From NCBI RefSeq assembly GCF_006345805.1, contig NC_043015.1, positions 44,888,001 to 44,952,000 of the forward strand: a DNA stretch of 64,000 nt. Direction: 5' to 3'. Position 1 is the stretch's first letter; the number at the start of each line of letters is the position of its first letter. The position numbers and the translations under genes were made by a program. The notes below the pieces were generated by a model. It was not told the DNA's origin. It ran no database searches and saw only the letters and a program-made list of their open reading frames with translations. The DNA comes from Octopus sinensis (lineage: Eukaryota). This document shows, piece by piece, positions 2,526 through 60,236 of this stretch.

Positions 2526-2667
2526 TATTATTGGTTCTGCAGCATCTATATTTTCACCAATAGAATCAGTTTAAGATTTATAACTTTTGTATAAAATAGC
2601 CAATGAAAACAAATTCTATTCCATTCGCTCTTTCCTCACATTCTTTTATTTTATTTTATTTTTCCAG

Positions 2668-3301
2668 GTTAGATATATTAATCAATAATGCTGGAATTGG
2701 CGTGAAGGTGAAAGAATGTACAAAACAGAATTTTGATCTATACTTTGGTGTGAACTACCTCGGACATTTCTTATTAACTTACTTATTGCTCGACCTCCTG
2801 AAAAAGTCTGCCCCAAGCCGAATCATAAATGTCAGTTCTCACGCTCATATATTTGTTAAAAGACTTCCAAGTTTAGAAAGAGGAGATCTCAGTGGGAAAG
2901 TAAAATATCCTCAATTGTCTGGATATGCAACAAGCAAATTAGCTAATATCCTACATGCGCAGATTTTGGCTAAAAAGCTCAAAGGTACTGGAGTTACTGC
3001 TAATTCTTTACACCCAGGAATGGTGAAGACTGAAATACTGAAAAATAATCCCATAAATAGTAAAGAATTACTTCGAATTGAAATCTACCGACTTCTCTTC
3101 AAATACATGGGTAGATCTGCCAAGGATGGTGCCAAAGTCGTCATACATATGGCAGTAGACAAAAGTCTTGAAAATGTCTCTGGCCAGTACTTTGAAAACT
3201 TGTCTATATCTTCTGGTAATTTAAGCAGACTAGCTAAAGATTTAAATTTTGCTAAGAATCTGTGGGATATTAGTTTAGAATTGTGTAATGCAGAATTATA
3301 A
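2668..3301 (+). CDS. Terminal coding exon of a retinol dehydrogenase-like SDR (RDH11/12/13/14 type); upstream exon(s) not found in the window
   Basis: Polypyrimidine tract and TTTCCAG acceptor end at 2667 (phase 2). The ORF then reads LDILINNAG, NYLGHFLLT, RIINVSS, catalytic YATSK (YxxxK), ANSLHPG and GQYF, with stop TAA at 3299-3301. The track's N-terminal MKTNS... is intron. Confidence 0.92.
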
Positions 3302-5133
3302 CTGAACTAAATAAGATTATGGATTTTTTCAATTACACCAAAAAAAATTTTTTAATGGGTGAAGAAAGAAAGGTTTGCCCAGTTTTTCTGTTACACATCT
3401 TTACAAGTGTTTGTCATGATGTTCTTGTAATCACTAGAAGAAGAAAAAAGTGTTTTCAAAGAACACTAGAACTCATTTCTACCTCTTTGCTGTTTTGAAA
3501 CTATTAAAGATAAAATTTAAGGGATATATGTTATTACAAATTAAATTTCCTTAAAATTGAATTGTCACCCTTCAGAAAAAGATGAGTAAAAACGAGAAAA
3601 AACAAGATTGTATTAGCTCTTCAATCCATTCCTAAACTGCCATTTTAGTCCGATTGTGAAAAATACCAAATATTTTAAAACAATTTCAGGTAATATTTGT
3701 GTTGTGGATTAAGATTTTTTAAAGTTTTTTTTTTTTTTTTTTAAATAATTTTTCAGGCAGCATATTATTTATATATTTTAATACAAGGTTTAACGATAAT
3801 TCACTCTGGAAAAAAATTTGTTTTTCTAATCTTGTTAGATGCAATCAACATTAAAACTGTAAATTTGTATTTGGAAAAAAAAAATCGAATTGTCATTATG
3901 AATTAAAGGTATTCAGCAGATTTTTTTTTTTTTTTGAATGAACTGAATTGATTGTACAAATACATATATATATATGTGTATATGTATGTGAGTGTGTGTG
4001 AATCTATTTACATGTTAGTGATCGGTAATCATTGAGAATTGCTAATAGAAGTGTTTGTGTGAGTGTGTTGGTTGTGTAAATATACATGGCTATTTTCAAT
4101 TCCAACATAAAATGGTTCTAAACCAGAGGTGCTCACAATGTCTTGGGGTTCATGAGTAGTCAATATGAAAAAAATGTTTGATTATGCAGTAAATTAAATG
4201 CTCATTAAGAGACGATTTGTACAGTTATATTTATGTACGTATGTATGTACTTGTATGTATGAATGTAAATATATATGTATGTATGTATGTATGTATTGTA
4301 AGGCTCTTTTTTACCTCGATCTTGCCTTGAATAAAAATGCGTTCAATGGCTTTTTTTCTCATGATTTATGTTGGTTAAATTCAATGTGGTTGTCGTAAAA
4401 ATATTTTTCAACCCTCCAATGAAAGTTGCTTTTACAAAACAATTTTAATAAACTTAATTTTAATTTTTATTAATTTTTTAATGGGTTTTAAAGATATTTT
4501 AAACTTCAGAATTGCTTTTTAAAAACTCTGCAAATCAGGAATCTTTTTTTTTTTTTTTCATTTACATTCAACAATCAGGGTTCATTTTACATTCATCCAA
4601 TCAAGATTCGTTTTATATTCAACCAATTAAGGTTGTTATGCCCAACCAATCAAGATCAATTATGCATTCTTATAAGTATTTTTTATCATATTAGATTGGA
4701 AAGAAAATAATATCATTTGTAAACCTCTCGAATGCATTGTATAAAGAGATGATATTTGTTTGAAAGTATCCAACACAACGAATTTTTGTGTACAAAGTAT
4801 TTTTAATGTTTGACTGTTGTAGAATGCTTCTAACAATCATTATTGGTAAATTGCTTTTTTAAATTTGACGAAATATATAATCACAATAATATATTGGTCA
4901 AAATCTTTTTTTTTTCTGTTTTTTTCCTTTAAATTTTTTGTCTTGTTTTGTTTTATATTGTATATTTATCGTCATCACAGAATTCCTCATAACTACAAAA
5001 AATAACCTCTCATTGGTGGATACCTGGGTGTGGTGCACTTCACCCTTGTCTTATCATGTTTCTGTAGAAATGCACTGCTTTTGTTTCAGTTAATTTTCAA
5101 AATAACGATGAATTTAGTAAAATCATTGTTTAA

Positions 5134-21859: not shown

Positions 21860-23240
21860 GCTGTTTAACCTACCGGAAGCGTCGCAAACAGGTGCGCGTT
21901 GGGAATTCTCCCATGCCAGACGAATTGCTCTCTTCAGGTCGATCAACTTGGTAATTTGGTCATCATTTTGGTGAACGTGTTTTTAATCGCCAATTATTTC
22001 TTCAGCAGCTTTGGTGATCGTTCGGCGTAGAAGGGACTATGTTTCCACACTGTCCAACTGGAGTGATGGGGTACTTCTTGTAGAAGTTTCGTGAGACGAG
22101 ATGAATAATCCCTCTCGACTGTGTAGGTCTTCAATTTCAAAATATCAAAGCGCCGTAGTCTCTTTGCAGATTTTTGGGGGTAGGGAAGATTTCGCAACCA
22201 GAGTCAGAGCCCGAACCGGAAATTAGTAATCGATGATCCGTCCAAAGTCATCTGCTCCGGGGAGGCTTCAGGTCACGATCAGGCCGCTCCTGTCCTATAA
22301 TCTGGTGAGGACGTCGCTCAGGATGTGCCAGTGCTTAGATCCCGGATCCCTCCACGTGGTCTTGTGATGGTTAGGAAGGCGGAAGAGGGTGTTAGTAATT
22401 AATAGCTCATTCTCAACGCATAAGCCAAGGAGAAGCAGTCCGTTCTAGTTGCAGCTTACCACACCTGCTTTCCCAGAATTCCCGTCCAGAGGTCATTAGC
22501 TCGGCCGACTCTGGCGTTCAAACCTCCCAATACGAGAAGTTTGTCTTTTCTTGGCACGACTTGGATGGTCCTGTTGAGATCGGAATAGAGAGAATCCTTT
22601 ATCTCATCACTAGAATCAAGGGCAGGAGTGTAAGCTGACACCAATGTAAGGTGATTGTTATTGAAAAAGGGAAGGCGGAAGGACATACGCCGTTCATTGA
22701 TAGAAGTGGGAGCCAGATTGTGTCTGTTCACTAAGGAAGTCTTCATCGCCAATGGCCGCGGTAAGCCAATCAGGGAAAAAAATGGTGTCCGGTATTTATC
22801 CCACCTTTTCTAGGGACTTTCCCGCATGGGTTGGGCTGCGGTGATCCTGACTAGGCCAGCCCAGTCGCATCGTGTATGTGTTTTCGGGCTAGGTGTTTCT
22901 AGCTGACTAAGTCGGGCCTGCTCCGTCGCCCAGTTATCATTGCTACTGGACCTAGGGAAAGGAGAGGAGAAGCTCGTTGTTCAAGCCACAGAACGGTTTT
23001 GTATGAGTTTGTTTAAGATGGACTGTGTTGCAATCACAACGCCCACGCACTTGACCACCCGCCTTCCCCAGCTGTACCATTGGGATTGGTGACACGCTGG
23101 ATCTGGTTAGGATGGTTGCAACGGGCTGCCGGATGTCTCAGATATAATTAAGATCCGCCTTGTTTGCGCCTTGTTCGCATGGCAGCAGAGGTTTTATATC
23201 GGAGTTTCCCTCTCCTAGACCAGAGGGCCTCAACCAATTT
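21860..23240 (-). mobile_element. RTE-clade LINE fragment: 5' UTR plus APE endonuclease and linker, degraded
   Basis: INERRMSFRLP..LVSAYTP..YSDL..LLVLGGLNARVG (APE domain) at 22456-22752; RTE-like 5' UTR motif GGTCTAGGAGAGGGAAACTCCGATATAAAACC at ~23190-23225. Confidence 0.85.
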
Positions 23241-29713: not shown

Positions 29714-30189
29714 TAACAACCTTCTAAAACAAAGGTGGGTGGGGGAACAATCCAAAGAACATAACTGATGGGCATAAGAGTCAACTTGTTCATTTTCTTG
29801 TTTATTCTGATTGTGTTCTTTCAACCATGAGTTTCGTTCCGTTTTTGTTTTTGTTATTTTTTTCTTACATCTCAGAGACGTTTAAACTGGATATGGCGTC
29901 TTCAGGCCTCCAACGGTAAAGAGTCTGAGTTATATTTTTTTGATTCAACCATATCTAACGATTGCAAATTTACCTCTCCACTTCTGAAAAGTTTTTAGCA
30001 TGCAAAATTTGATAACATTAGTTGGCTGCTTTGGCACTGAATTATTATCCAAAATACATACCCACTCTGTCATGAGAGTACCTGATTTTCTTTTAGAATG
30101 GGCTTGTGAAAAATTAGTGGACAAATATTAGACAGACAGATAGGCAGACAGACAGATAGATAGATAGTTAGATAGATAGGTATATATAG

Positions 30190-30296
<107 letters not shown>

Positions 30297-30418
30297 GGTA
30301 GATAACTAGGTATATATATATATATTCAAAATATATACATTCAAAATGTGACTGCATGTGTACCGTTGGCGATTTTTTTTCCTCCGTCTTCCCTTCTTTG
30401 GATCTTTCCTTTTCCTAT

Positions 30419-30453
30419 GTTTCTGACGAAGAGCTCCGCTCGAAACGTTAAAC
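30419..30453 (+). ncRNA. Minimal hammerhead motif in a PLE terminal-repeat fragment
   Basis: GTTT-CTGACGA-A-GAGC(TCC)GCTC-GAAAC-GT-T-AAAC; stem III reduced to the palindrome AACGTT. Confidence 0.7.
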
Positions 30454-30580
30454 CCTCCTTCTTTCCTTCTTTCCTGAGCATCCAATAACACTATATTTGT
30501 TCCACGTCCTCGCGTTGTTCTGTTTTCTCTTTGTGTTTTCATGTTTGGATTAACTTTATATATATATATATATATATATC

Positions 30581-30622
<42 letters not shown>

Positions 30623-30877
30623 TAAGGATATATGCACACGTTTGTGTGTGTGTATATATATATATATGAGTTTGTGTGTGTATGTAATGATTGTATGTGT
30701 CTGTGCGTGTGTAGCGATTGTTTATATTTTGTCATAGAATAACGCGAAAAGCAAGCAACATAGAGTAACAGTGAAAGAGTACATTTCAACGTATATGTGG
30801 CAACTAAGATTACAGTCCTACATACTTTTGAATGCAGGTGGTCTCTCACAAACCTCGAACTGTTCAAGTTGTTATTG

Positions 30878-30879
30878 TA

Positions 30880-30958
<79 letters not shown>

Positions 30959-31795
30959 ATGATGATGACGACGACGGCGGCGGTACCACACTTAATGATA
31001 GCGGCAGAGATGGTGGTGGTGGTGGTGGTGTCTACGTGAGATAATAATGATGATAGTGATGATTAAGATGATGGTGATGAAGATGAGGAGGAGGAAGAGA
31101 AAGAGAAGAAGCAGGAGCGGGAGAAGAAGTAGAAGAAGAAGAAGAAGAAGAAGAAGAAGAAGAAGAAGATGAAAAAGAAGAAGGAGAAGAAGAAGAAGAA
31201 GAAGAAGAAGAAGATGAAAAAGAAGAAGGAGAAGAAGGATAAGAAGAAGAAGAAGAAGAAGAAGAAGATGAAAAAGAAGAAGGAGAAGAAGGAGAAGAAG
31301 AAGGAGAAGAAGAAGAAGAAGAAGAAGAAGAAGAAGAAGATGAAAAAGAAGAAGGAGAAGAGGCGAAAAGAAGAAGAAGAAGAAGAAGAAGAAGAAGATG
31401 AAAAAGAAGAAGGATAAGAAGAAGAAAAGAAGAAGAAGAAGAAGAAGAAGAAAAGAAGAAGAAGAAGAAGAAGAAGAAGAAGAAAGGAGTGAAGTCAGAA
31501 GAGGAATACGACAAGAAGGAGAAAAGGGGATGAAGGGAAGAGGGAAGTGGGAGGGCAGAGCAGAATAAAAGGCGACGAGAAGGGGAGGATCAAAGGCGAG
31601 GGGAGCGGAGGGGATTGTGTAGGGGGGAGAGAAGGACGAGGGGAGGAGAATAAAAAGAATGGAGGACGACGATGACGACGACAACGATGATGATGATGAT
31701 GATGGTAATGATGATGGTGATGATGATGGTGATGGTGATGATGATGGTGATGGTGATGATGATGATGATGATGATGGTGATGATGGTGGTGATTG

Positions 31796-31874
<79 letters not shown>

Positions 31875-31900
31875 GATGATGGTGATGATGGTGGTGATTG

Positions 31901-31947
<47 letters not shown>

Positions 31948-31990
31948 GTGATGATGATGGTGATTGTGATGATGATGATGATGATGACAA
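30878..31990. repeat. Compound (GCT)(GAT)(GGT)(GAA)(GAT) trinucleotide arrays
   Basis: Directly visible; source of the poly-Lys, Asp, Ser and Leu ORFs. Confidence 0.97.
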
Positions 31991-32143
31991 CGTCGAAGAT
32001 AATGATGAAATATTTTGGAGTTAAAAAGAAATGGTACCCTAGTTTATGGTGAAGTAACGAATGGCAACAATGGACAACAGAATGGCTGGCACCTGTAGGA
32101 TTAAGAAACAGAATTGGGTAACATGGACAGAAGGTGAAAAGTC

Positions 32144-32572
32144 GGATCTTTTCGGTTTGAACGGCAGTTTTTTCTAGCGGCGTCATATGAAATTGTCACC
32201 CATAATTATGACCCTAGTATCGATCTATTGCATTTCAATCTGTTTTAGGGTTAGGGTTAGTTAGGGTTAGGGCTATGGGTGGGGGAAGTATCTTTTTTCT
32301 TCAGAGATTAAATAAACCCAATCTGTTTCTTAAACGAGGGACATATTCATACGGCACAGAATGTTTTCACCTCAATAGACGGTCATTGATTGGTTGAAAT
32401 TGCAGAAATTGAAGAAGAAAAACAACAAATATCTTACAAAGTATAGAATTTTCTCAATAAAGCTAAGAGAAAAAGATGTTTTATAAACACATTCTACCAG
32501 TATACGAAGTTTAAAAGTGTTTAGTTACGTGGAAATTATTTTAAAAAACTGCCGTTCAAACCGAAAAGATCC
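32144..32572. mobile_element. Merlin-like MITE
   Basis: TSD GAAAAGTC / GAAATGTC (7/8 match). Confidence 0.9.
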
Positions 32573-41154: not shown

Positions 41155-41570
41155 GACGAGATACCTCTTTCTTTATTACCTACAAGGGGCTAAACATAGA
41201 GGGGACAAACAAAGACAGACATAGGTATTAAGTCGATTACATCGACCCCAGTGCGTAACTGGTACTTAATTTATCGACCCCGAAAGGATGAAAGGCAAAG
41301 TCGACCTCGGCGGAATTTGAACTCAGAACGTAACGGCAGACAAAATACCTATTTCTTTATTACCTACAAGGGGCTAAACATAGAGGGGACAAACAAAGAC
41401 AGACATAGGTATTAAGTCGATTACATCGACCCCAGTGCGTAACTGGTACTTAATTTATCGACCCCGAAAGGATGAACGGTAAAGTCGACCTCGGCGGAAT
41501 TTGAACTCAGAACGTAACGGCAGACAAAATACCGCTAAGCATTTCGCCCGGCGTGCTAACGGTTCTGCCT
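41155..41570 (-). mobile_element. SINE family A: head, two near-identical 185-bp units and the start of a third
   Basis: Period of 185 bp visible between 41161 and 41346. Confidence 0.9.
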
Positions 41571-42339: not shown

Positions 42340-42480
42340 TATTTTATACGATGAGCGTTTCGATCCATCCCTTATGGTCCCTTATGGATGGGATGCTGTG
42401 CATCATACTGCGTTGCATCCATCTTGCAGTCTGGGTCACATCAGGTACATTCATACATAAAGTGGTATCTTGCTAAAGAT
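42340..42480 (-). ncRNA. Diverged hammerhead-like motif flanking the array
   Basis: Minus strand CTGATGT-GACCC...GGATC-GAAAC-GCTCATC-GTA; stem I not in register. Confidence 0.5.
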
Positions 42481-42574: not shown

Positions 42575-45500
42575 ATATCACAATCAAGGAACGGCCATAA
42601 TAGGCCATTCACCCACTAGAAATAACAGCCAAAAAGCTTCAACCGCAAAATAACATTAATTCCGTAAACAGGAGAAAATTAAAAAACATTTACCCTGAAA
42701 TTCTTATACGATGCACCGTTTCGTCTAGTTTTAATGGTAAAACTAACACCGATTAAATTAAATCAAGCCAATCTACCATAGGCCCTTAGATTCATCAGTA
42801 AGGAATAGCAAATCGGAACAGATATTTTTCACGAGCATTCTCGTCCATGCCTCGCCAATATCTGACCTAAAATTTTCAAATCGTCGCACTCGCGCCAAAT
42901 TTATCGGCAGCAAATAAATATAAGCCGCCGATTCCATTACGGAACCAACCAGAAAATTCATAATTAATCAATATAGGGAGGCAAAAAAATTTTGTAGAAT
43001 TCTTTTGCCCCCAGCGGCCTAGTGGGAAAAAATTATTAAATAGTCATAACCATTTTTAAGTTCAAATCACAATCAAGGACGGCCATAATAGGCCATTCAC
43101 CCACTAGAAATAACAGCCAAAAGCTTCAACCGAACAAATAACATTATAATTCCGTAAACCAGGAGAAAATTAAAAGACATTTACCCTGAAATTCCTTATA
43201 CGATGCACCGTTTCGTCTACTGTTTAATGGTAAACTAACCTGATTAAATTAAATCAAGCCAATCTTACCATAGGCCCTTAGATTCATCAGTAAGGAATAG
43301 CCAACTCGGAACAGATATTTTTCACGAGGCATTCTCGTCCATTGCCTCGCCATATCTGACCTAAAATTTTCAAATCGTCGCACTCGCGCGCCAAATTTAT
43401 CGGCAGCAAATAAATATAAGCCGCCGAATTCCATTACGGAACCAACCAGAAAATTCATAATTAATCAATATAGGGAGGCAAAAAAATTTTGTAGAATTCT
43501 TTTGCCCCCAGCGGCCTAGTGGGAAAAATTAAATAGTCATAAACCATTTTTAAGTTCAATATCACAATCAAGGAACGGCCATAATAGGCCATCACCCACT
43601 AGAAATAACAGCAAAAAGCTTCAACCGCAAAAAATAATTAATTCCGTAAACCAGGAGAAAATAAAAAACATTTACCCTGAAATTCCTTATACGATGCACC
43701 GTTTCGTCTCTGTTTAATGGTAAACTAACCTGATTAAATTAAATCAAGCCAATCTACCATAGGCCCTTAGATTCATCAGTAAGGAATAGCCAAATCGGAA
43801 CAGATATTTTTCACGAGGCATTCTCGTCCATGCCTCGCCAATATCTGACCTAAAATTTTCAAATCGTCGCACTCGCGCCAAATTTATCGGCAGCAAATAA
43901 ATATAAGCCGCCGATTCCATTACGGAACCAACCAGAAAATTCATAATTAATCAATATAGGGAGGCAAAAAAATTTTGTAGAATTCTTTTGCCCCCAGCGG
44001 CCTAGTGGGAAAAAATTAAATAGTCATAAACCATTTTTAAGTTCAATATCACAATCAAGGAACGGCCATAATAGGCATTCACCCACTAGAAATAACAGCC
44101 AAAAAGCTTCAACCGCAAAATAACATTAATTCCGTAAACCAGGAGAAAATTAAAAAACATTTACCCTGAAATTCCTTATACGATGCACCGTTTCGTCTAC
44201 TGTTTAATGGTAAACTAACCTGATTAAATTAAATCAGCCAATCTACCATAGGCCCTTAGATTCATCAGTAAGGAATAGCCAAATCGGAAACATATTTTTC
44301 ACGAGGCATTCTCGTCCATGCCTCGCCAATATCTGACCTAAATTTTCAAATCGTCGCACTCGCGCCAAATTTATCGGCAGCAAATAAATATAAGCCGCCG
44401 ATTCCATTACGGAACCAACCAGAAAATTCATAATTAATCAATATAGGGAGGCAAAAAAATTTTGTGTAGAATTCTTTTGCCCCCAGCGGCCTAGTGGGAA
44501 AAAATTAATAGTCATAAACCATTTTTAAGTTCAAATCACAATCAAGGAACGGCCATAATAGGCCATTCACCCACTAGAAAAACAGCCAAAAAGCTTCAAC
44601 CGCAAAATAACATTAATTCCGTAAACCAGGAGAAAATTAAAAAACATTTACCCTGAAATTCCTTATACGATGCACCGTTTCGTCTACTGTTTAATGGTTA
44701 AACTAACCTGATTAAATTAAATCAAGCCAATCTACCATAGGCCCTTAGATTCATCAGTAAGGAATAGCCAAATCGGAACAGATATTTTTCACGAGGCATT
44801 CTCGTCCATGCCTCGCCAATATCTGACCTAAAATTTTCAAATCGTCGCACTCGCGCAAAAATTTATCGGCAGCAAATAAATATAAGCCGCCGATTCCATT
44901 ACGGAACCAACCAGAAAATTCATAATTAATCAATATAGGGAGGCAAAAAAATTTTGTAGAATTCTTTTGCCCCCAGCGGCCTAGTGGGAAAAAATTAAAT
45001 AGTCATAAACCATTTTTAAGTTCAATATCACAATCAAGGAACGGCCATAATAGGCCATTCACCCACTAGAAATAAAATAACAGCCAAAAAGCTTCAACCG
45101 CAAAAAACATTAATTCCGTAAACCAGGAGAAAATTAAAAACATTTACCCTGAAATTCCTTATACGATGCACCGTTTCGTCTACTGTTAATGGTAAACTAA
45201 CCTGATTAAATTAAATCAAGCCAATCTACCATAGGCCCTTAGATTCATCAGTAAGGAATAGCCAAATCGAACAGATTTTTCACGAGGCATTCTCGTCCAT
45301 GCCTCGCCAATATCTGACCTAAAATTTTCAAATCGTCGCACTCGCGCCAAATTTATCGGCAGCAAATAAATATAAGCCGCCGATTCCATTACGGAACCAA
45401 CCAGAAAATTCATAATTAATCAATATAGGGAGGCAAAAAAAATTTGTTTAGAATTCTTTTGCCCCCAGCGGCCTAGTGGGAAAAAATTAAATAGTCTCAT

Positions 45501-48500
45501 AAACCATTTTTAAGTTCAATATCACAATCAAGGAACGGCCATAATAGGCCATTCACCCACTAGAAATAACAGCCAAAAAGCTTCAACCGCAAAATAACAT
45601 TAATTCCGTAAACCAGGAGAAAATTAAAAACATTTACCCTGAAATTCCTTATACGATGCACCGTTTCGTCTACTGTTTAATGGTAAACTAACCTGATTAA
45701 ATTAAATCAAGCCAATCTACCATAGGCCCTTAGATTCATCAGTAAGGAATAGCCAAATCGGAACAGATATTTTTCACGAGGCATTCTCGTCCATGCCTCG
45801 CCAAATATTGACCTAAAATTTTCAAATCGTCGCACTCGCGCCAAATTTATCGGCAGCAAATAAATATAAGCCGCCGATTCCATTACGGAACCAACCAGAA
45901 AATTCATAATTAATCAATATAGGGAGGCAAAAAAATTTTTTAGAATTCTTTTGCCCCCAGCGGCCTAGTGGGAAAAAAATAAATAGTCATAAACCATTTT
46001 TAAGTTCAGTATATCACAATCAAGGAACGGCCATAATAGGCCATTCACCCACTAGAAATAACAGCCAAAAAGCTTCAACCGCAAAATAACATTAATTCCG
46101 TAAACCAGGAGAAAATTAAAAACATTTACCCTGAAAATCCTTATACGATGCACCGTTTCGTCTACTGTTTAATGGTAAACTAACCTGATTAAATTAAATC
46201 AAGCCAATCTACCATAGGCCCTTAGATTCATCAGTAAGGAATAGCCAAATCGGAACAGATATTTTTCACGAGGCATTCTCGTCCATGCCTCGCCAATATC
46301 TGACCTAAAATTTTCAAATCGTCGCACTCGCGCCAAATTTATCGGCAGCAAATAAATTATAAGCCGCCGATTCCATTACGGAACCAACCAGAAAATTCAT
46401 AATTAATCAATATAGGGAGGCAAAAAAATTTTGTAGAATTCTTTTGCCCCCAGCGGCCTAGTGGAAAAAATTAAATAGTCATAAACCATTTTTAAGTTCA
46501 ATATCACAATCAAGGAACGGCCATAATAGGCCATTCACCCACTAGAAATAACAGCCAAAAAGCTTCAACCGCAAAATAACATTAATTCCGTAAACCAGGA
46601 GAAAATTAAAAAACATTTACCCTGAAATTCCTTATACGATGCACCGTTTCGTCTACTGTTTAATGGTAAACTAACCTGATTAAATTAAATCAAGCCAATC
46701 TACCATAGGCCCTTAGATTCATCAGTAAGGAATAGCCAAATCGGAACAGATATTTTTCACGAGGCATTCTCGTCCATGCCTCGCCAATATGACCTAAAAT
46801 TTTCAAATCGTCGCACTCGCGCCAAATTTATCGGCAGCAAATAAATATAAGCCGCCGATTCCATTACGGAACCAACCAGAAAATTCATAATTAATCAATA
46901 TAGGGAGGCAAAAAAATTTTGTAGAATTCTTTTGCCCCCAGCGGCCTAGTGGGAAAAAATTAAATAGTCATAAACCATTTTTAAGTTCAATATCACAATC
47001 AAGGAACGGCATAATAGGCCATTCACCCACTAGAAATAACGCCAAAAAGCTTCAACCGCAAAATAACATTAATTCCGTAAACCAGGAGAAAATTAAAAAA
47101 CATTTACCCTGAAATTCCTTATACGATGCACCGTTTCGTCTACTGTTTAATGGTAAACTAACCTGATTAAATTAAATCAAGCCTACCATCTACCATAGGC
47201 CCTTAGATTCATCAGTAAGGAATAGCCAAATCGGAACAGATATTTTTCACGAGGCATTCTCGTCCATGCCTCGCCAATATCTGACCTAAAATTTTCAAAT
47301 CGTCGCACTCGCGCCAAATTTATCGGCAGCAAATAAATATAAGCCGCCGATTCCATTACGGAACCAACCAGAAAATTCATATTAATCAATATAGGGAGGC
47401 AAAAAAATTTTGTAGAATTCTTTTGCCCCCAGCGGCCTAGTGGGAAAAAATTAAATAGTCATAAAACATTTTTAAGTTCAATATCACAATCAAGGAACGG
47501 CCATAATAGGCCATTCACCCACTAGAAATAACAGCCAAAAAGCTTCAACCGCAAAATAACATTAATTCCGTAAACCAGGAGAAAATAAAAAACATTTACC
47601 CTGAAATTCCTTATACGATGCACCGTTTCGTCTACTGTTTAATGGTAAACTACCTGATTAAATTAAATCAAGCCAATCTACCATAGGCCCTTAGATTCAT
47701 CAGTAAGGAATAGCCAAATCGGAACAGATATTTTTCACGAGGCATTCTCGTCCATGCCTCGCCAATATCTGACCTAAAATTTTCAAATCGTCGCACTCGC
47801 CGCCAAATTTATCGGCAGCAAATAAATATAAGCCGCCGATTCCATTACGGAACCAACCAGAAAATTCATAATTAATCAATATAGGGAGGCAAAAAAATTT
47901 TGTAGAATTCTTTTGCCCCCAGCGGCCTGTGGGAAAAAATTAAATAGTCATAAACCATTTTTAAGTTCAATATCACAATCAAGGAACGGCCATAATAGGC
48001 CATTCACCCACTAGAAATAACAGCCAAAAAGCTTCAACCGCAAAATAACATTAATTCCGTAAACCAGGAGAAAATTAAAAAACATTTACCCTGAAATTCC
48101 TTATAATGCACCGTTTCGTCTACTGTTTAATGGTAAACTAACCTGATTAAATTAAATCAAGCCAATCTACCATAGGCCCTTAGATTCATCAGTAAGGAAT
48201 AGCCAAATCGGAACAGATATTTTTCACGAGGCATCTCGTCCATGCCTCGCCAATATCTGACCTAAAATTTTCAAATCGTCGCACTCGCGCCAAATTATCG
48301 GCAGCAAATAAATATAAGCCGCCGATTCCATTACGGAACCAACCAGAAAATTCATAATTAATCAATATAGGGAGGCAAAAAAATTTTGTAGAATTCTTTT
48401 GCCCCCAGCGGCCTAGTGGGAAAAAATTAAATAGTCATAAACCATTTTTAAGTTCAATATCACAATCAAGGAACGGCATAATAGGCCATTCACCCACTAG

Positions 48501-49221
48501 AAATAACAGCCAAAAAGCTTCAACCGCAAAATAACATTAATTCCGTAAACCAGGAGAAAATAAAAAACATTTACCCTGATGAAATTCCTTATACGATGCA
48601 CCGTTTCGTCTACTGTTTAATGGTAAACTAACCTGATTAAATTAAATCAAGCCAATCTACCATAGGCCCTTAGATTCATCAGTAAGGAATAGCCAAATCG
48701 GAACAGATATTTTTCACGAGGCATTCTCGTCCATGCCTCGCCAATATCTGACCTAAAATTTTCAAATCGTCGCACTCGCGCCAAATTTATCGGCAGCAAA
48801 TAAATATAAGCCGCCGATTCCATTACGGAACCAACCAGAAAATTCATAATTAATCAATATAGGGAGGCAAAAAAATTTTGTAGAATTCTTTTGCCCCCAG
48901 CGGCTAGTGGGAAAAAATTAAATAGTCATAAACCATTTTTAAGTTCAATATCACAATCAAGGAACGGCCATAATAGGCCATTCACCCACTAGAAATAACA
49001 GCCAAAAAGCTTCAACCGCAAAATAACATTAATTCCGTAAACCAGGAGAAAATTAAAAAACATTTACCCTGAAATTCCTTATACGATGCACCGTTTCGTC
49101 TACTGTTTAATGGTAAACTAACCTGATTAAATTAAATCAAGCCAATCTACCATAGGCCCTTAGATTCATCAGTAAGGAATAGCCAAATCGGAACAGATAT
49201 TTTTCACGAGGCATTCTCGTC
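42575..49221 (-). repeat. Tandem array of a ~490-bp hammerhead-containing unit (candidate non-LTR retrozyme), 13 full copies plus one partial
   Basis: ATCACAATCAAGG recurs at 42577, 43066, 43561, 44048, 44535, 45027, 45521, 46013, 46503, 46992, 47483, 47972, 48459 and 48950 (mean period ~490 bp); differences are mostly small indels. Confidence 0.97.
49075..49179 (-). ncRNA. Type I hammerhead ribozyme motif (representative; one per array unit)
   Basis: UUCCUUA-CUGAUGA-[stem II]-GAAAC-G-GUGCAU-C-GUA-UAAGGAA: 7-bp stem I, canonical core, stem III ACGG/UCGU with UGCA loop; predicted cleavage between 49082 and 49081. Confidence 0.8.
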
Positions 49222-49223
49222 AT

Positions 49224-52670
<3,447 letters not shown>

Positions 52671-56264: not shown

Positions 56265-57945
56265 GAAATAACAACATCGCATTTATCATTCCTTAAATAT
56301 TATTGAAATTCGATTTCTTTTAATACGTACAATATGTTTTTGTCAACGATTCACTCGTTATTCTACGTTGTTATTTTCTACAATAAACGTTCTCCCTAAT
56401 TTCATAAATGCTGTATTCAAAACTTCCAAAATTTATGTATATATCTTTACATGAGTACACGACCTTACAAACAGGTTACATATACACTGTCTCAAGATTT
56501 TCAAGAGACAGCATGTTTTATTTATGCAAAAGTTACGGCATTTACAATATAGTCCACACATTATTATTGACATTCACTGTAAAGTTTCCTGAAGAACTTA
56601 ATTCATGAACAGACATGAGCCGACACGAACACACTTTGACCTTAATTTTCAATCTATATTTTCACATTTGTATTTGTTCCGCTTAAATCAAGAAACGCAT
56701 TCAGCTTAGATAGGCTAAAGTTGAAAACATGATACCTTTCAGTCAGCTGAATATAAAAGGTAATAGTGGAATATAATGGAATATATAAAATAGAGTAATT
56801 AATACTATATACAAATATATATATAGCGCATTATTAATACACAAATATGAGAGAGAATCCACAATATGGACGCTCTTACGCTAAAGATAGATCCGCAAGG
56901 GTCTCAACCACTAAGAATTGTTCTCAAGAAAAATTTAGCACACTATGAACGTAAGCGAGCAGGACAAATGAAAAATAACAAAAATATAGATTAACCCCAC
57001 GCAATTATTTCACTGTTAATAAATTATGCAATTTTACTTACATAATTAATCCTCAGATCATCGGTGAGGTTCGTCATAAAATATAATTTGTCGAACTGCA
57101 CGCTAGATATTAACACGAGGTCAAAAATACGAGTAGTTCGGCCTATTATATTCACAGTTATATTCAAATGCCCTCGTTCTAGCGCGCCAAATTCCCGGAA
57201 ATAAATACTGCATATCCAATTTTTTCACCCTTATTTTGATATATAGCGCATTAAATATGTATTGATGACACATAACGTATTATATATATATTGATTAGAT
57301 TTACGAATGGAAAAAAGTAGGAAAAAATTTATTTGGTCATCAGAATTTACGACCATAAAACGTTAGTTGAGCATTATGAATCAAAGAAAACTGCAGAATG
57401 AACTTTCGAATACAATTGATAAGCAGAACGACTCTGGTTTGTGTTGAAAAATTGAGAGGTCGTGTCGAATGACGTAGAATGTGAATCTTATAAGTGGAAT
57501 GAATTGAACAGCCTCAAATGGTTAACTGTTTATCACAAATATATATATATATATAATATATATATATATAACAAATTAATAAATAAAACATATGCATATA
57601 TACATACATATATGTACGTACCTACATCTACATGTATATATACATGCATATATGGGTACAGGACACCAAAAAAAAAAGTCGAACACAATGAGAAACGAAA
57701 ACATAAACACAAAACCAAGGAAATGGACATATTTCTTAAACAACGAAAAAATAGAGTACAGAACATACAACACAAGGAAAATTCCCCTCCTTCAGTCACC
57801 TCTAATTCATCTACTCCGCGTTTAGAAGGTAAAGGCGAGACACGACTTCATTGAAACATTCCTTCCCGCAAAAGGCAAATTAAATAAAATTTGAGATTTT
57901 TTGCGGAGGGGTATGTGTATAATATATAATATATATATATATATA

Positions 57946-58439: not shown

Positions 58440-60049
58440 GTAACAGAAACTTAGTACACATGTGGGCATGATCCGAAAAGCTCGTCCTTGTATTTAGACA
58501 TGTAGTAGGGTTAAGCTGCTTTTCCAGATAAGCCATCTCTCCATGTCGCATAGACCGCACCTTCCGCTGCCGTTAGTATAGGGCTTAATCTGGCCAAATC
58601 TTCCATTGTATGTTATAATCGACACCTTTATCTCTAAAGACAAAATATGATTAGACAATTGTGTCGCTTTTCTTTTGTTCCAGTGCCTAAAGCTCAAAGT
58701 GTGGTTATTGAACCTGCCTTGAAATTACCCTCTGTAAGGCCCACGTATTTCTTCGTCGAAACGGTGTCTTAGTGGTTATAGAGTTTACGGTAGCTTCATA
58801 TATGATGGTCTTGGACATGCAAGCTCCATTTAGTGGGCACAATTCTTTATTCCTGCATGAGCAGCTGTTTTCTTCTTGGTTTTTTTGTATGTTATGTTTG
58901 ATTATGTTTTTAAAATTGGTAGTTGAACTAAAACTAATTTTTAAATTGTGTCTATTCTATTGAAGAGTTTCCTATAAGTATGGTTAACTGGAAAATGTCT
59001 ATCTATCAGTGCTAGGAATATTTACCTATATTGAAGGCCACCTCGGGTGAGTAAGGGGGCGTAAACCAGATGACCTTCCTATTTCTATTATTCCTTTTCT
59101 TTACTGTTGGGCTAGTGATAGGTGTATATTTTATTTTATCGCTAAAACACTATCTTTTAAAGCCTTATATAAACTGGGGCAACGCTATTGAAGATGTCCT
59201 CATCAGATGAGAGGCTAGAAATCCTCTTACTAATATTTGTAACTAAATTTTTGAATACTATAGGGGGATGGCATGAACCTACATTAATATAACTTAGTCT
59301 ATCATTGGGCTTCCTATAAGGCTTATAAATATTCTTATTAAGATCTAGGAAACGTCTAAGAAATTGACAACCGTCAAGTTAGTATCTATAGTTATACTAA
59401 GTCCGAAGTGCTTCATTAACTGGATAATATCCTTCCTAAAACGATCTTGTGCTGGTCCATTTGTATTAGCTGTTAAGGCGAGGGCATCATCTTTGTAGAT
59501 GGCGAAATGTACGTTAGGGAATGTCTTACCTAAGGTATCTAGGAGAAAAAGTCCAATTAGATCACAGATGCCTGCCCCATCATATGAACCCATGCTCACA
59601 TCGAAAGCGCCCTCTGTGTCGGTTGTTTTTTTACCCACTTTGCGTCCTCACTGAAAAGTAAGGTCTTTCTAGCATGGAAGATTATTTCCTTATCATGGTA
59701 CTAATTTCTATGAAGTCACTAGCGAAGATGAGGGCTTTATCTAGCAGTTCTTTAGAGATAGAGGCATAAAAATCAACAATATCGAATTGTGTAAACCTCG
59801 CTTTTTCTTATTCTTAATAGCTTTAAACCAGTCTACGACTTCTATACATTAGACCATTGTACTAGCCTAGTATCGGTCTTAATTTTCGTATTTATTTATC
59901 TAAAATTTCTTTGCTAATAATCCCAAGTCTGACTTGGCTGGGTTGATAAGCCTACATTTAGGGTTGGAAAGGAAGTTTTCTTTATGATCTTTAATAGTAA
60001 TAAAGGCCTCTTTTTGGGGAAGGGCTTCTATTTTTTTATCTAATTTAAG

Positions 60050-60050
<1 letters not shown>
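58440..60050 (-). pseudogene. Penelope-like retroelement RT plus GIY-YIG endonuclease, frameshifted and partly deleted
   Basis: FITIKDHKENF..PKCRLINPAKS..FDIVDFY..FDVSMGSYDGAGICDLIG..YKDD..VNFLDV..YKPYRKPND..HPP; C-terminal SFRH..TQLSNHI..KPYTNGSGRCGLCDMER. Confidence 0.9.
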
Positions 60051-60091
<41 letters not shown>

Positions 60092-60139
60092 AAATTATTA
60101 TATATACTATATATATATTATATATAATATAAATATATA

Positions 60140-60187
<48 letters not shown>

Positions 60188-60236
60188 GTATGTATATATA
60201 TATATACATGTATATATATATATATATTTATTTATT

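What the first reader, a model, noticed from the sequence alone, without database searches (positions are those of the whole stretch)
42575..49221. 6.6-kb array of ~490-bp hammerhead units: candidate cephalopod non-LTR retrozyme / circRNA-producing satellite
Seen: 13 full units and one partial, near-identical, each with a minus-strand type I hammerhead (7-bp stem I, CUGAUGA, GAAAC, GUA site); no RT or transposase; no ribozyme recognised on the plus strand. Established: newt satellite 2, schistosome Sm-alpha and other metazoan non-LTR retrozymes are hammerhead tandem repeats whose transcripts self-cleave into monomers that can circularise, and they are thought to use an RT in trans. Inference: multimeric transcripts would be cut into ~490-nt monomers, larger than the typically reported ~170-400 nt. 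I recall no description of such a family in cephalopods but cannot verify novelty.
Basis: partly seen in the sequence, partly recalled or inferred. Interest (0 to 1): 0.92.

Follow-up and report, generated by a model that had tools for sequence, protein, structure and literature searches.

The report
Octopus tandem repeat carrying hammerhead ribozymes
A 6.6-kb block of Octopus sinensis DNA is made of about 14 near-identical 491-bp units, each carrying a hammerhead self-cleaving RNA motif, so it looks like an octopus member of the "retrozyme" repeats already known in other invertebrates and in amphibians; none has been described in octopus, but the kind is not new.

Summary
Window 42575-49221 is a tandem array (period ~491 bp, 13.6 copies, 97-99.8% identical to consensus). 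Every unit carries a type I hammerhead motif on the minus strand: an 8-bp stem I, CUGAUGA, GAAA and a GUA cleavage site. Twelve of 14 copies pass a structural descriptor that finds nothing else in the window and about 1 hit per 40 Mb of random sequence.

The window is Octopus sinensis chromosome CM016877.1, and the array lies about 39 kb downstream of an RDH12-like gene. The unit is non-coding, AT-rich, has no LTRs, and folds far better than shuffled sequence. A transcript spanning two hammerheads has the classical double hammerhead as its minimum-energy structure, held by a 12-bp helix III formed between units.

Four caveats apply:
- Rfam's hammerhead models do not detect it. It has an A·C mismatch at 10.1/11.1 and a ~60-nt insertion in helix II.
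- There is no covariation, because the copies are too alike.
- No other genomic copies, transcription or cleavage could be checked.
- A 491-nt unit is not unusually large: published retrozyme consensus lengths run from 51 to 972 bp.

This is a new member of a known kind, of moderate interest.

The parts
42575..49221 (-). Tandem array of a 491-bp non-coding unit: 13 full units plus one 225-bp partial unit. The functional strand is the minus strand.
   Evidence: TRF. Unit cutting and consensus. blastn of the consensus shows no copy elsewhere in the window.
46144..46634 (-). Representative predicted monomer RNA (491 nt). It runs from U1.1 (46634), just after one cleavage site, to A17 (46144) of the next site.
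   Evidence: Cleavage-site coordinates. Monomer fold: MFE -159 kcal/mol against -118+-6 for shuffles, z -6.8.
46627..46733 (-). Representative hammerhead (consensus-identical copy):
- Stem I 5' strand 46726-46733.
- CUGAUGA 46719-46725.
- Helix II 46651-46718 (A10.1 at 46718, C11.1 at 46651).
- G12-A14 46648-46650.
- Helix III plus loop ACGGUGCAUCGU 46636-46647.
- A17 at 46635, with cleavage between 46635 and 46634.
- Stem I 3' strand 46627-46634.
46663..46706 (-). Extension of helix II: a 19-bp hairpin with 5 G·U pairs and a 6-nt loop. An internal loop separates it from the 4-bp base of helix II. This insertion is why the curated models miss the motif.
   Evidence: Fold. Pair table. Only weak miRNA-like Rfam hits fall here. 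On the opposite strand the model scores 22 bits against 150.
49074..49180 (-). Hammerhead copy 1 (intact); cleavage 49082|49081.
48584..48690 (-). Hammerhead copy 2 (intact); cleavage 48592|48591.
48096..48200 (-). Hammerhead copy 3, defective: CG is deleted from the 3' strand of helix III, so the site reads UUA.
47606..47711 (-). Hammerhead copy 4 (intact); cleavage 47614|47613.
47114..47223 (-). Hammerhead copy 5 (intact core; 3-4-nt insertion/change in the helix II extension); cleavage 47122|47121.
46136..46242 (-). Hammerhead copy 7 (one mismatch in stem I, leaving 6 contiguous bp); cleavage 46144|46143.
45644..45750 (-). Hammerhead copy 8 (intact); cleavage 45652|45651.
45154..45259 (-). 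Hammerhead copy 9 (intact); cleavage 45162|45161.
44658..44765 (-). Hammerhead copy 10 (intact); cleavage 44666|44665.
44171..44276 (-). Hammerhead copy 11 (intact); cleavage 44179|44178.
43682..43787 (-). Hammerhead copy 12 (base of helix II reduced to 3 bp by a T deletion); cleavage 43690|43689.
43191..43298 (-). Hammerhead copy 13 (intact); cleavage 43199|43198.
42699..42806 (-). Hammerhead copy 14 in the terminal partial unit, defective: a deletion in the 3' strand of stem I and several changes in helix II.
   Evidence: 114.9 bits against ~150.
42344..42450 (-). Degenerate hammerhead-like relic 125 bp beyond the array's 3' end, in the same orientation. The core is mutated (CUGAUGUGA, i.e. 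A9 to U) and there is a ~62-nt helix II insertion. It shares CGAAACG(C/G)U(-/G)CAUCGUAUAA with the array's ribozyme.
   Evidence: Rfam Hammerhead_1 gives 19.5 bits (gathering 34), with E 0.88 in 8 kb and 0.022 in 201 nt. The 18/20 local match to the consensus is.

Best explanation
The array is a non-LTR retrozyme-type hammerhead satellite of Octopus sinensis: a non-autonomous, non-coding 491-bp element present as head-to-tail copies.

Proposed mechanism:
1. The minus strand is transcribed as a multimer (inferred).
2. In the nascent multimer, the quasi-palindromic helix III segments (ACGGUGCAUCGU) of neighbouring units pair into a 12-bp helix. The stem I strands are swapped between units, giving a double hammerhead with both CUGAUGA/GAAA cores free. 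This is shown only as the predicted minimum-energy fold.
3. Each site is cut after GUA, releasing 491-nt monomers that start 5'-UAAGGAAUUUC and carry a 5'-OH and a 2',3'-cyclic phosphate (inferred from hammerhead chemistry).
4. In the isolated monomer the predicted best fold pairs UGAUG of the core with CAUCG of helix III. The monomer or circle would therefore be protected from re-cleavage (predicted).
5. By analogy with mussel, coral and axolotl retrozymes, a host RtcB-type tRNA ligase would circularise the monomers. A Penelope-like element reverse transcriptase supplied in trans would then copy the circle by rolling-circle reverse transcription, yielding tandem genomic copies (inferred from PMC7229834 and PMC7761336; not tested here).
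For: - Array and unit structure.
- All hammerhead core nucleotides (C3-A9, G12-A14, A15.1-U16.1, H17=A) are invariant in 14/14 copies, and 12/14 copies have all three helices.
- The descriptor background is 0-1 (strict) to 3-8 (relaxed) hits per 40 Mb of random sequence, with none elsewhere in the window.
- Stem I (8 bp) encloses the remaining ~373 nt, which gives type I topology.
- The helix III duplex between two copies is -17.5 kcal/mol, against -0.2 for the hairpin. Two modules cofold into the double hammerhead, and so does a full 621-nt HHR-spacer-HHR transcript.
- The monomer MFE masks the core: -36.5 kcal/mol against -32.2 for the active fold.
- Six G·U pairs occur in the ribozyme helices. 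A covariance model scores 135-150 bits on the minus strand (115 for the degraded terminal copy) and <=24 on the plus strand. This argues for an RNA-level structure on the minus strand.
- Whole-monomer fold z-score is -6.8.
- GC is 0.37-0.38. There is no ORF longer than 68 aa, no protein homologue, no tRNA and no Rfam family.
- A mismatch at the base of helix II has a precedent in an active retrozyme ribozyme: axolotl HHR_Amex2 has U·U there and cleaves 22% per hour as a monomer and better as a dimer (PMC7229834).
- A related degenerate hammerhead lies next to the array.
- Penelope-like elements are annotated in Octopus genomes (PMC13282606; PMC8557442), and an RT/GIY-YIG-like remnant is in the window.
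Against: - Rfam Hammerhead_1 and its clan give no hit on the array at gathering score, or at E<=10 in 8 kb, or in a 171-nt search.
- Position 10.1/11.1 is A·C rather than the strongly conserved G-C, and helix II carries an unusual ~60-nt insertion. Activity is therefore not assured.
- The copies are too similar for covariation: 0 compensatory pairs.
- Differences among copies are only weakly depleted in the ribozyme, 16 of 104 events against 23% expected.
- No target-site duplication was found.
- No second locus, other species, transcript or circular RNA could be examined. The only external pattern hit is a chance match in a GC-rich bacterial contig.
- T-runs on the ribozyme strand would block Pol III multimer synthesis, and no promoter is identified.
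Confidence: 0.6

Rival explanations
1. Decayed retrozyme turned into plain satellite. On this view the unit descends from a hammerhead-bearing element, but the ribozyme is now crippled by the A·C at 10.1/11.1 and the long helix II insertion. The array would have grown by unequal crossing-over or replication slippage at the DNA level. No self-cleaving or circular RNA would be made.
For: - Rfam models fail to detect the motif.
- The base pair at the bottom of helix II is non-canonical.
- There is no clear purifying selection within the array and no TSD.
- Only one locus was seen.
- PLE-type hammerheads show low in vitro activity (PMC4209133).
Against: - All 11 strictly conserved core nucleotides and all three helices are intact in 12/14 copies.
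- The double-hammerhead fold is the MFE of the dimer.
- A base-of-helix-II mismatch is tolerated in axolotl HHR_Amex2.
- The very high identity of the copies implies recent amplification of an intact motif.
Confidence: 0.27
2. An ordinary satellite in which a hammerhead-like motif arose by chance.
For: - Octopus genomes are about 2.8 Gb (O. vulgaris assembly size). At my descriptor's background rate that predicts on the order of a hundred or more strict chance matches genome-wide.
- There is no covariation and no Rfam support.
Against: - Per 491-bp unit, the chance of a strict match is about 2.5e-5.
- Features not required by the descriptor are also present. Helix III with its loop is quasi-palindromic, giving a 12-bp inter-unit helix. 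The helices are rich in G·U and strand-specific.
- A second, diverged hammerhead-like motif that shares the 3' half lies 125 bp away.
Confidence: 0.06
3. The array is part of, or a tandemised terminal repeat (pLTR) of, an autonomous Penelope-like element rather than an independent non-autonomous element.
For: - PLE terminal repeats carry type I hammerheads with enlarged helix II and palindromic helix III (PMC4209133).
- Vertebrate retrozymes are phylogenetically related to PLE pLTRs.
- A PLE-like remnant lies 9 kb away on the same strand.
Against: - No RT or EN coding sequence lies inside or adjacent to the array.
- The consensus has no similarity to the remnant or to anything else in the window.
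- No hammerhead was found near the remnant, nor in a full-length homologue's contig L003.
- PLE min-HHRs typically have a 4-5-bp helix I and G10.1-C11.1. Here helix I is 8 bp and 10.1/11.1 is A·C.
Confidence: 0.07

Closest known systems
Metazoan non-LTR retrozymes (Cervera & de la Pena 2020, PMC7229834): Mytilus galloprovincialis, Acropora millepora, Ambystoma mexicanum
   Same: Head-to-tail repeats of a few hundred bp, each with a type I hammerhead. Low GC, no ORF, no LTR/PBS/PPT, and a strongly self-paired monomer RNA. The host genomes also carry Penelope-like elements.
   Different: - Unrelated in sequence and found in a cephalopod.
- The unit is 491 bp, against ~170-400 nt RNAs in that paper, though within the 51-972 bp range reported in 2026.
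- Helix II carries a 19-bp hairpin extension, and 10.1/11.1 is A·C.
- Expression and circularity were shown experimentally for those elements and not for this one.
Newt satellite 2 / axolotl HHR_Amex1 and HHR_Amex2 retrozymes
   Same: A weak helix III hairpin with a palindromic loop, so that two tandem ribozymes form a double hammerhead. HHR_Amex2 also has a mismatch (U·U) at the base of helix II and still cleaves.
   Different: Here helix III is longer, 3-4 bp plus the tetraloop UGCA, giving a 12-bp inter-unit helix. Stem I is 8 bp. The loop 1/loop 2 tertiary-contact nucleotides of the amphibian motifs are not recognisable. Helix II is about 15 times longer.
Minimal hammerheads in the terminal repeats of Penelope-like elements (Cervera & de la Pena 2014, PMC4209133)
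   Same: Type I topology, an enlarged helix II, an extra or unpaired nucleotide just after A9, a palindromic helix III region and predicted action as dimers.
   Different: PLE min-HHRs keep G10.1-C11.1, have a short helix I (4-5 bp) and flank an RT/GIY-YIG ORF. Here there is no ORF, helix I is 8 bp and 10.1/11.1 is A·C.
Schistosoma Sm-alpha hammerhead repeats
   Same: A repetitive, non-coding invertebrate element with a type I hammerhead in each unit.
   Different: Sm-alpha has a compact canonical ribozyme (4-bp helix II, G10.1-C11.1, defined loop-loop contacts) that is active as a monomer and is matched by Rfam RF00163. This motif is not matched.
Rfam RF00163 Hammerhead_1
   Same: The same invariant core and the same order of helices.
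   Different: No hit at any threshold tried on the array. Only the neighbouring degenerate relic reaches 19.5 bits, against a gathering score of 34.

Membership tests
Hammerhead ribozyme, type I | Invariant core: C3 U4 G5 A6 N7 G8 A9 ... G12 A13 A14, the A15.1-U16.1 pair, and a cleavage-site nucleotide H17 that is not G | tested here: met
   CUGAUGA, GAAA and A15.1...U16.1 A17 are present and invariant in 14/14 copies.
Hammerhead ribozyme, type I | Three helices around the core. Helices II and III are closed by loops and helix I is open, or closed only by the rest of the molecule. | tested here: met
   Helix I is 8 bp. Helix II is 4 bp plus an internal loop plus 19 bp. Helix III is 3-4 bp plus a tetraloop. 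All are present in 12/14 copies.
Hammerhead ribozyme, type I | G10.1-C11.1 (purine-pyrimidine) pair at the base of helix II. This is quasi-conserved rather than strictly defining. | tested here: not met
   A·C in all copies. An active natural exception exists, axolotl HHR_Amex2 with U·U (PMC7229834), so this lowers confidence in activity but does not exclude it.
Hammerhead ribozyme, type I | Score at or above the Rfam RF00163 gathering threshold. This is an operational criterion. | tested here: not met
   No hit at gathering score, none at E<=10 in 8 kb and none in a 171-nt search.
Hammerhead ribozyme, type I | Helices supported by compensatory changes among homologues | tested here: inconclusive
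   There are 0 compensatory pairs among 12 distinct, near-identical copies. No homologues from elsewhere were obtainable.
Hammerhead ribozyme, type I | Site-specific self-cleavage | not testable with these tools
   This needs in vitro transcription of monomer and dimer constructs.
Non-LTR retrozyme | Short tandem repeats (a few hundred bp), each unit with a type I hammerhead and at least two consecutive complete motifs | tested here: met
   13.6 units of 491 bp, with 12 complete motifs that include runs of consecutive units. The criterion is as used in bioRxiv 10.64898/2026.07.22.740005.
Non-LTR retrozyme | Non-coding, no LTRs, low GC (<45-50%) | tested here: met
   The longest ORF is 68 aa and has no homologue. 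The flanks are unrelated to the unit. GC is 0.37-0.38. PBS/PPT motifs were not searched for specifically.
Non-LTR retrozyme | Monomer RNA predicted to be stable and highly self-paired | tested here: met
   MFE is -159 kcal/mol against shuffles at -118+-6, z -6.8, with 59% of nucleotides paired. The circular fold gives z -6.7.
Non-LTR retrozyme | Dispersed multiple loci in the genome (evidence of mobility), with TSDs when present | not testable with these tools
   No eukaryotic genome DNA collection is available here. Only this one locus is present in the window, and no TSD lies at its edges.
Non-LTR retrozyme | Expressed as linear and circular monomer RNAs | not testable with these tools
   No transcriptome data are accessible.
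Non-LTR retrozyme | Co-occurrence with autonomous Penelope-like elements in the same genome | tested here: inconclusive
   PLEs are annotated in O. vulgaris and in Octopus spp. (PMC13282606; PMC8557442). The window holds a degenerate RT/GIY-YIG-like remnant at ~58.5-60.2 kb. Its ~720-aa homologues carry YRDD and a weak GIY-YIG hit, E 9e-4, below the Pfam cut-off. Assigning it to PLEs rests partly on my recollection of PLE architecture.

The most novel reading that the evidence does not exclude
The hammerhead might be activated by RNA editing. The invariant A10.1·C11.1 mismatch sits at the base of an unusually long (4 + 19 bp) double-stranded helix II. An adenosine opposite C in long dsRNA is a favoured ADAR substrate, and cephalopods edit RNA extensively (both points from general knowledge). 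Editing A10.1 to inosine would create an I-C pair equivalent to the canonical G10.1-C11.1. Self-cleavage and circle formation would then depend on ADAR activity. Nothing here tests this. It is simply not excluded, and it would account for the two oddities of the motif together. I found no natural editing-dependent ribozyme in the literature search.
Probability: 0.04. Interest if true: 0.85.

Novelty: new member of a known kind. Interest (0 to 1): 0.38.

Why it matters
If it is active, this would extend hammerhead retrozymes and their ribozyme-made circular RNAs to cephalopods. In that lineage, transposable elements, abundant dsRNA and RNA editing are already of interest. It would also add a hammerhead variant with a very long helix II and a mismatched 10.1/11.1 that curated covariance models miss. 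Surveys based on Rfam may therefore under-count such elements. The kind of element itself, however, is already well described in other molluscs, cnidarians, insects, fishes and amphibians.

Tried and rejected
1. Rfam at gathering and permissive thresholds on the window, on the array and on a single ribozyme. No hammerhead hit on the array, only noise (miRNA-like, RalA and similar).
2. Fetching other copies through a called ORF. The 66-aa ORF of the unit has no word match among 5.8 billion proteins.
3. Pattern scans of public DNA. The metagenome scan gave one hit (L001), a GC-rich bacterial contig with no repeat and so a chance match. Viral contigs gave none. No eukaryotic genome collection is available, so copy number, dispersal and cross-species conservation remain untested.
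4. A covariance model built from the 14 copies (R1) and run over the whole window with filters off. It found only the 14 copies. The best other hit (56985-57076, 14.9 bits) lacks the core.
5. A min-HHR scan (PLE type, helix II >=5 bp) of the window found none.
6. A TSD search at the array edges found only a 6-mer.
7. Homology of the flanks to the unit. None was found apart from the 20-nt 3' half of the ribozyme in the relic.
8. Pfam on 20 window ORFs. Only the RDH12-like exon is significant, and no RT or transposase model hit.
9. tRNA/SINE origin of the unit. There is no tRNA. The SINE-like repeats with (AC)n(AT)n tails abut the array but are not part of it.
10. The bacterial-type promoter/terminator scan is uninformative for a eukaryote.
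11. PDB sequence search of a full-length homologue of the RT-like remnant found nothing.
Full report
**Source and setting.** The ORF at 2603-3301 (+) is 100% identical to Octopus sinensis retinol dehydrogenase 12-like isoform X1. The gene's record is GCA_006345805.1, chromosome CM016877.1. Aligning that locus to the window places window base 1 at CM016877.1:44,888,001. The array therefore lies at about 44,930,575-44,937,221, roughly 39 kb downstream of the last exon of that gene. I could not identify any gene across it.

**The observation.** TRF finds a single array at 42575-49221 with period 492, 13.6 copies and 97% matches.
- Cutting in register gives 13 units of 488-494 bp plus a 225-bp partial unit, and a 491-nt consensus.
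- Units are 96.9-99.8% identical to the consensus, and the consensus matches nothing else in the window.
- There are 104 differences from consensus. Of these, 75 are short indels, which looks like long-read noise as much as divergence.
- The two units and the partial unit at the low-coordinate end are the most diverged.

**The hammerhead.** On the minus strand every unit reads 5'-AUUCCUUA CUGAUGA A UCUA...UAGA C GAAA CGGUGCAUCGU A|UAAGGAAU.
- All strictly conserved hammerhead nucleotides are present and invariant in 14/14 copies.
- Helix I is 8 bp.
- Helix II starts with an A·C opposition at 10.1/11.1. It continues with 4 bp, an internal loop, and a 19-bp hairpin containing five G·U pairs.
- Helix III is A15.1-U16.1, C-G, G-C and G·U, capped by UGCA.
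- Helix I encloses the other ~373 nt, which gives type I topology.

A structural descriptor of my own passes 12 of 14 copies. It fails the copy at 48192 (CG lost from helix III) and the terminal copy at 42798 (deletion in stem I). It finds nothing else on either strand of the window. In 40 Mb of composition-matched random sequence it gives 3-8 relaxed and 0-1 strict hits. A strict match in a given 491-bp unit is therefore expected about 2.5e-5 times. An isolated genomic hit would not be remarkable in a genome of roughly 2.8 Gb, but one sitting in each unit of a tandem array is.

**Evidence that cuts the other way.**
- Rfam's Hammerhead_1 and related models do not report the motif. This holds at gathering score, at E<=10 over 8 kb and when only 171 nt are searched. 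The ~60-nt insertion in helix II and the A·C at the normally G-C 10.1/11.1 pair are the likely reasons, but this is inference.
- The copies are too alike for covariation, with 0 compensatory pairs.
- Differences are only mildly depleted in the ribozyme, 16 of 104 against 23% expected.
- A mismatch at the base of helix II is not disqualifying. Axolotl HHR_Amex2 has U·U there and cleaves, better as a dimer (PMC7229834).

**Predicted behaviour.**
- The 12-nt helix III segment ACGGUGCAUCGU is quasi-palindromic. Two copies form a 12-bp duplex of -17.5 kcal/mol, against -0.2 for the hairpin.
- Two ribozyme modules cofold into the classical double hammerhead.
- The same happens in a complete 621-nt HHR-spacer-HHR transcript. 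In its MFE structure (-206.8 kcal/mol) helix III forms between units, the stem I strands are swapped between units, and both catalytic cores are unpaired.
- In the isolated module the MFE fold (-36.5) pairs UGAUG of the core with CAUCG of helix III. The active fold is 4.3 kcal/mol worse.

This is the pattern described for newt, axolotl and PLE hammerheads. Multimers cleave, while monomers and circles are protected (PMC4209133; PMC7229834).

The whole monomer is much more structured than shuffles, with z -6.8 linear and -6.7 circular. G·U pairs make the ribozyme helices specific to the minus strand. Model R1 scores 135-150 bits on the minus strand (115 for the degraded terminal copy) and <=24 on the plus strand.

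**What the unit is not.**
- It is not coding: the longest ORF is 68 aa and has no homologue.
- It is not a tRNA, snRNA or other Rfam family.
- It has no LTRs, and the flanks are unrelated to it.
- GC is 0.37-0.38, with marked G>C and T>A skew on the ribozyme strand.

**Comparison with the known.** These are the published features of metazoan non-LTR retrozymes:
- type I hammerheads in short tandem repeats (150-450 bp);
- low GC;
- no LTR, PBS or PPT;
- self-paired monomers that are cut by the ribozyme, circularised by an RtcB-type ligase, and thought to be copied by PLE reverse transcriptase (PMC7229834; PMC7761336).

A 2026 preprint reports retrozyme consensus lengths of 51-972 bp and relates the elements to PLE terminal repeats. 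A 491-bp unit is therefore not exceptional. None of these papers covers a cephalopod, nor does any other paper holding 'hammerhead ribozyme' together with 'cephalopod'. PLEs are annotated in Octopus. I file the array as a probable new member of this known kind, with an atypical ribozyme. Membership in the functional sense (cleavage, circles, mobility) is untested.

**Surroundings.**
- 125 bp beyond the 3' end of the array, in the same orientation, lies a degenerate hammerhead-like motif (42344-42450). It scores 19.5 bits against Rfam Hammerhead_1, below threshold, and has A9 mutated. It also has a ~62-nt helix II insertion and shares 18 of 20 nt of the 3' half (CGAAACG..CAUCGUAUAA) with the array's ribozyme. 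I read it as a relic of a related element. This argues weakly that such elements have been at this locus more than once.
- The high-coordinate edge abuts a SINE-like repeat with (AC)n(AT)n tails that recurs at 50.1, 51.2 and 51.8 kb.
- No TSD is visible.
- At ~58.5-60.2 kb (-) there is a frameshifted retroelement remnant. [quoted passage not shown] This matches Penelope-like architecture as I recall it. It shows no similarity to the array and has no hammerhead nearby.

**Verdict.** It is the best available reading, with confidence of about 0.6 that the array is a retrozyme-type element whose transcripts self-cleave. The main rival is a decayed, DNA-amplified satellite derived from such an element (~0.27). 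Novelty: a new member of a known kind. Interest is moderate. The most novel reading not excluded is an editing-activated hammerhead, in which A10.1·C11.1 becomes I-C through ADAR. It is speculative, at about 4%.

Noticed in passing
window 42344-42450 (-): Degenerate hammerhead-like motif just outside the array. Rfam Hammerhead_1 gives 19.5 bits, below the gathering score of 34. The core reads CUGAUGUGA, and there is a ~62-nt helix II insertion. Its 3' half, CGAAACGCUCAUCGUAUAA, is nearly identical to that of the array's ribozyme. It is probably a relic of a related element.
   Followed up: partly
window ~58500-60200 (-): Frameshifted retroelement remnant. It has RT-like motifs (KDHK...CRLINPAK, FDIVDFYASIS, YKDD, FLDVS) followed by a CxC...C...C linker and a GIY-YIG-like segment. 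Homologues of ~720 aa exist (P0241 and others), one with a weak Pfam GIY-YIG hit. The architecture is Penelope-like. No hammerhead was detected near it.
   Followed up: partly
window 49218-52300: SINE-like repeat with (AC)n(AT)n microsatellite tails, recurring within an ~800/1600-bp segmental repeat (copies at ~49218, 50144, 51171 and 51759). One copy ends exactly at the array's edge. The same repeat family occurs at ~12.6 kb and ~17.4 kb of the window, and several times in the RDH12-like gene's introns, outside the window (L002).
   Followed up: partly
window 41161-41533: Two tandem copies (98% identical) of a 184-bp unit about 1 kb from the array. It is unrelated in sequence to the hammerhead unit.
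   Followed up: no
window 2603-3301 (+): Last large exon of the Octopus sinensis retinol dehydrogenase 12-like gene (adh_short domain). It fixes the window's origin as CM016877.1:44,888,001-44,952,000.
   Followed up: yes
window 30100-32000: Block of microsatellites, (TAGA)42, (GAA)137 and (GATGAT)50, which causes the strong GC skew and the spurious long ORFs at 30992-32186.
   Followed up: partly
window 22459-22809 (-): A 117-aa ORF whose sequence (…LTLVSAYTP…LLVLGGLNARVG…) resembles, from memory, the apurinic-endonuclease domain of a LINE. It has no Pfam hit.
   Followed up: no
L003 (ENA metagenome scaffold, 3874 bp) 731-944 and 3748-3872: An intact 722-aa homologue of the RT/GIY-YIG-like remnant is flanked by direct repeats about 3 kb apart, a pLTR-like partial tandem. 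No Rfam hammerhead is present.
   Followed up: partly
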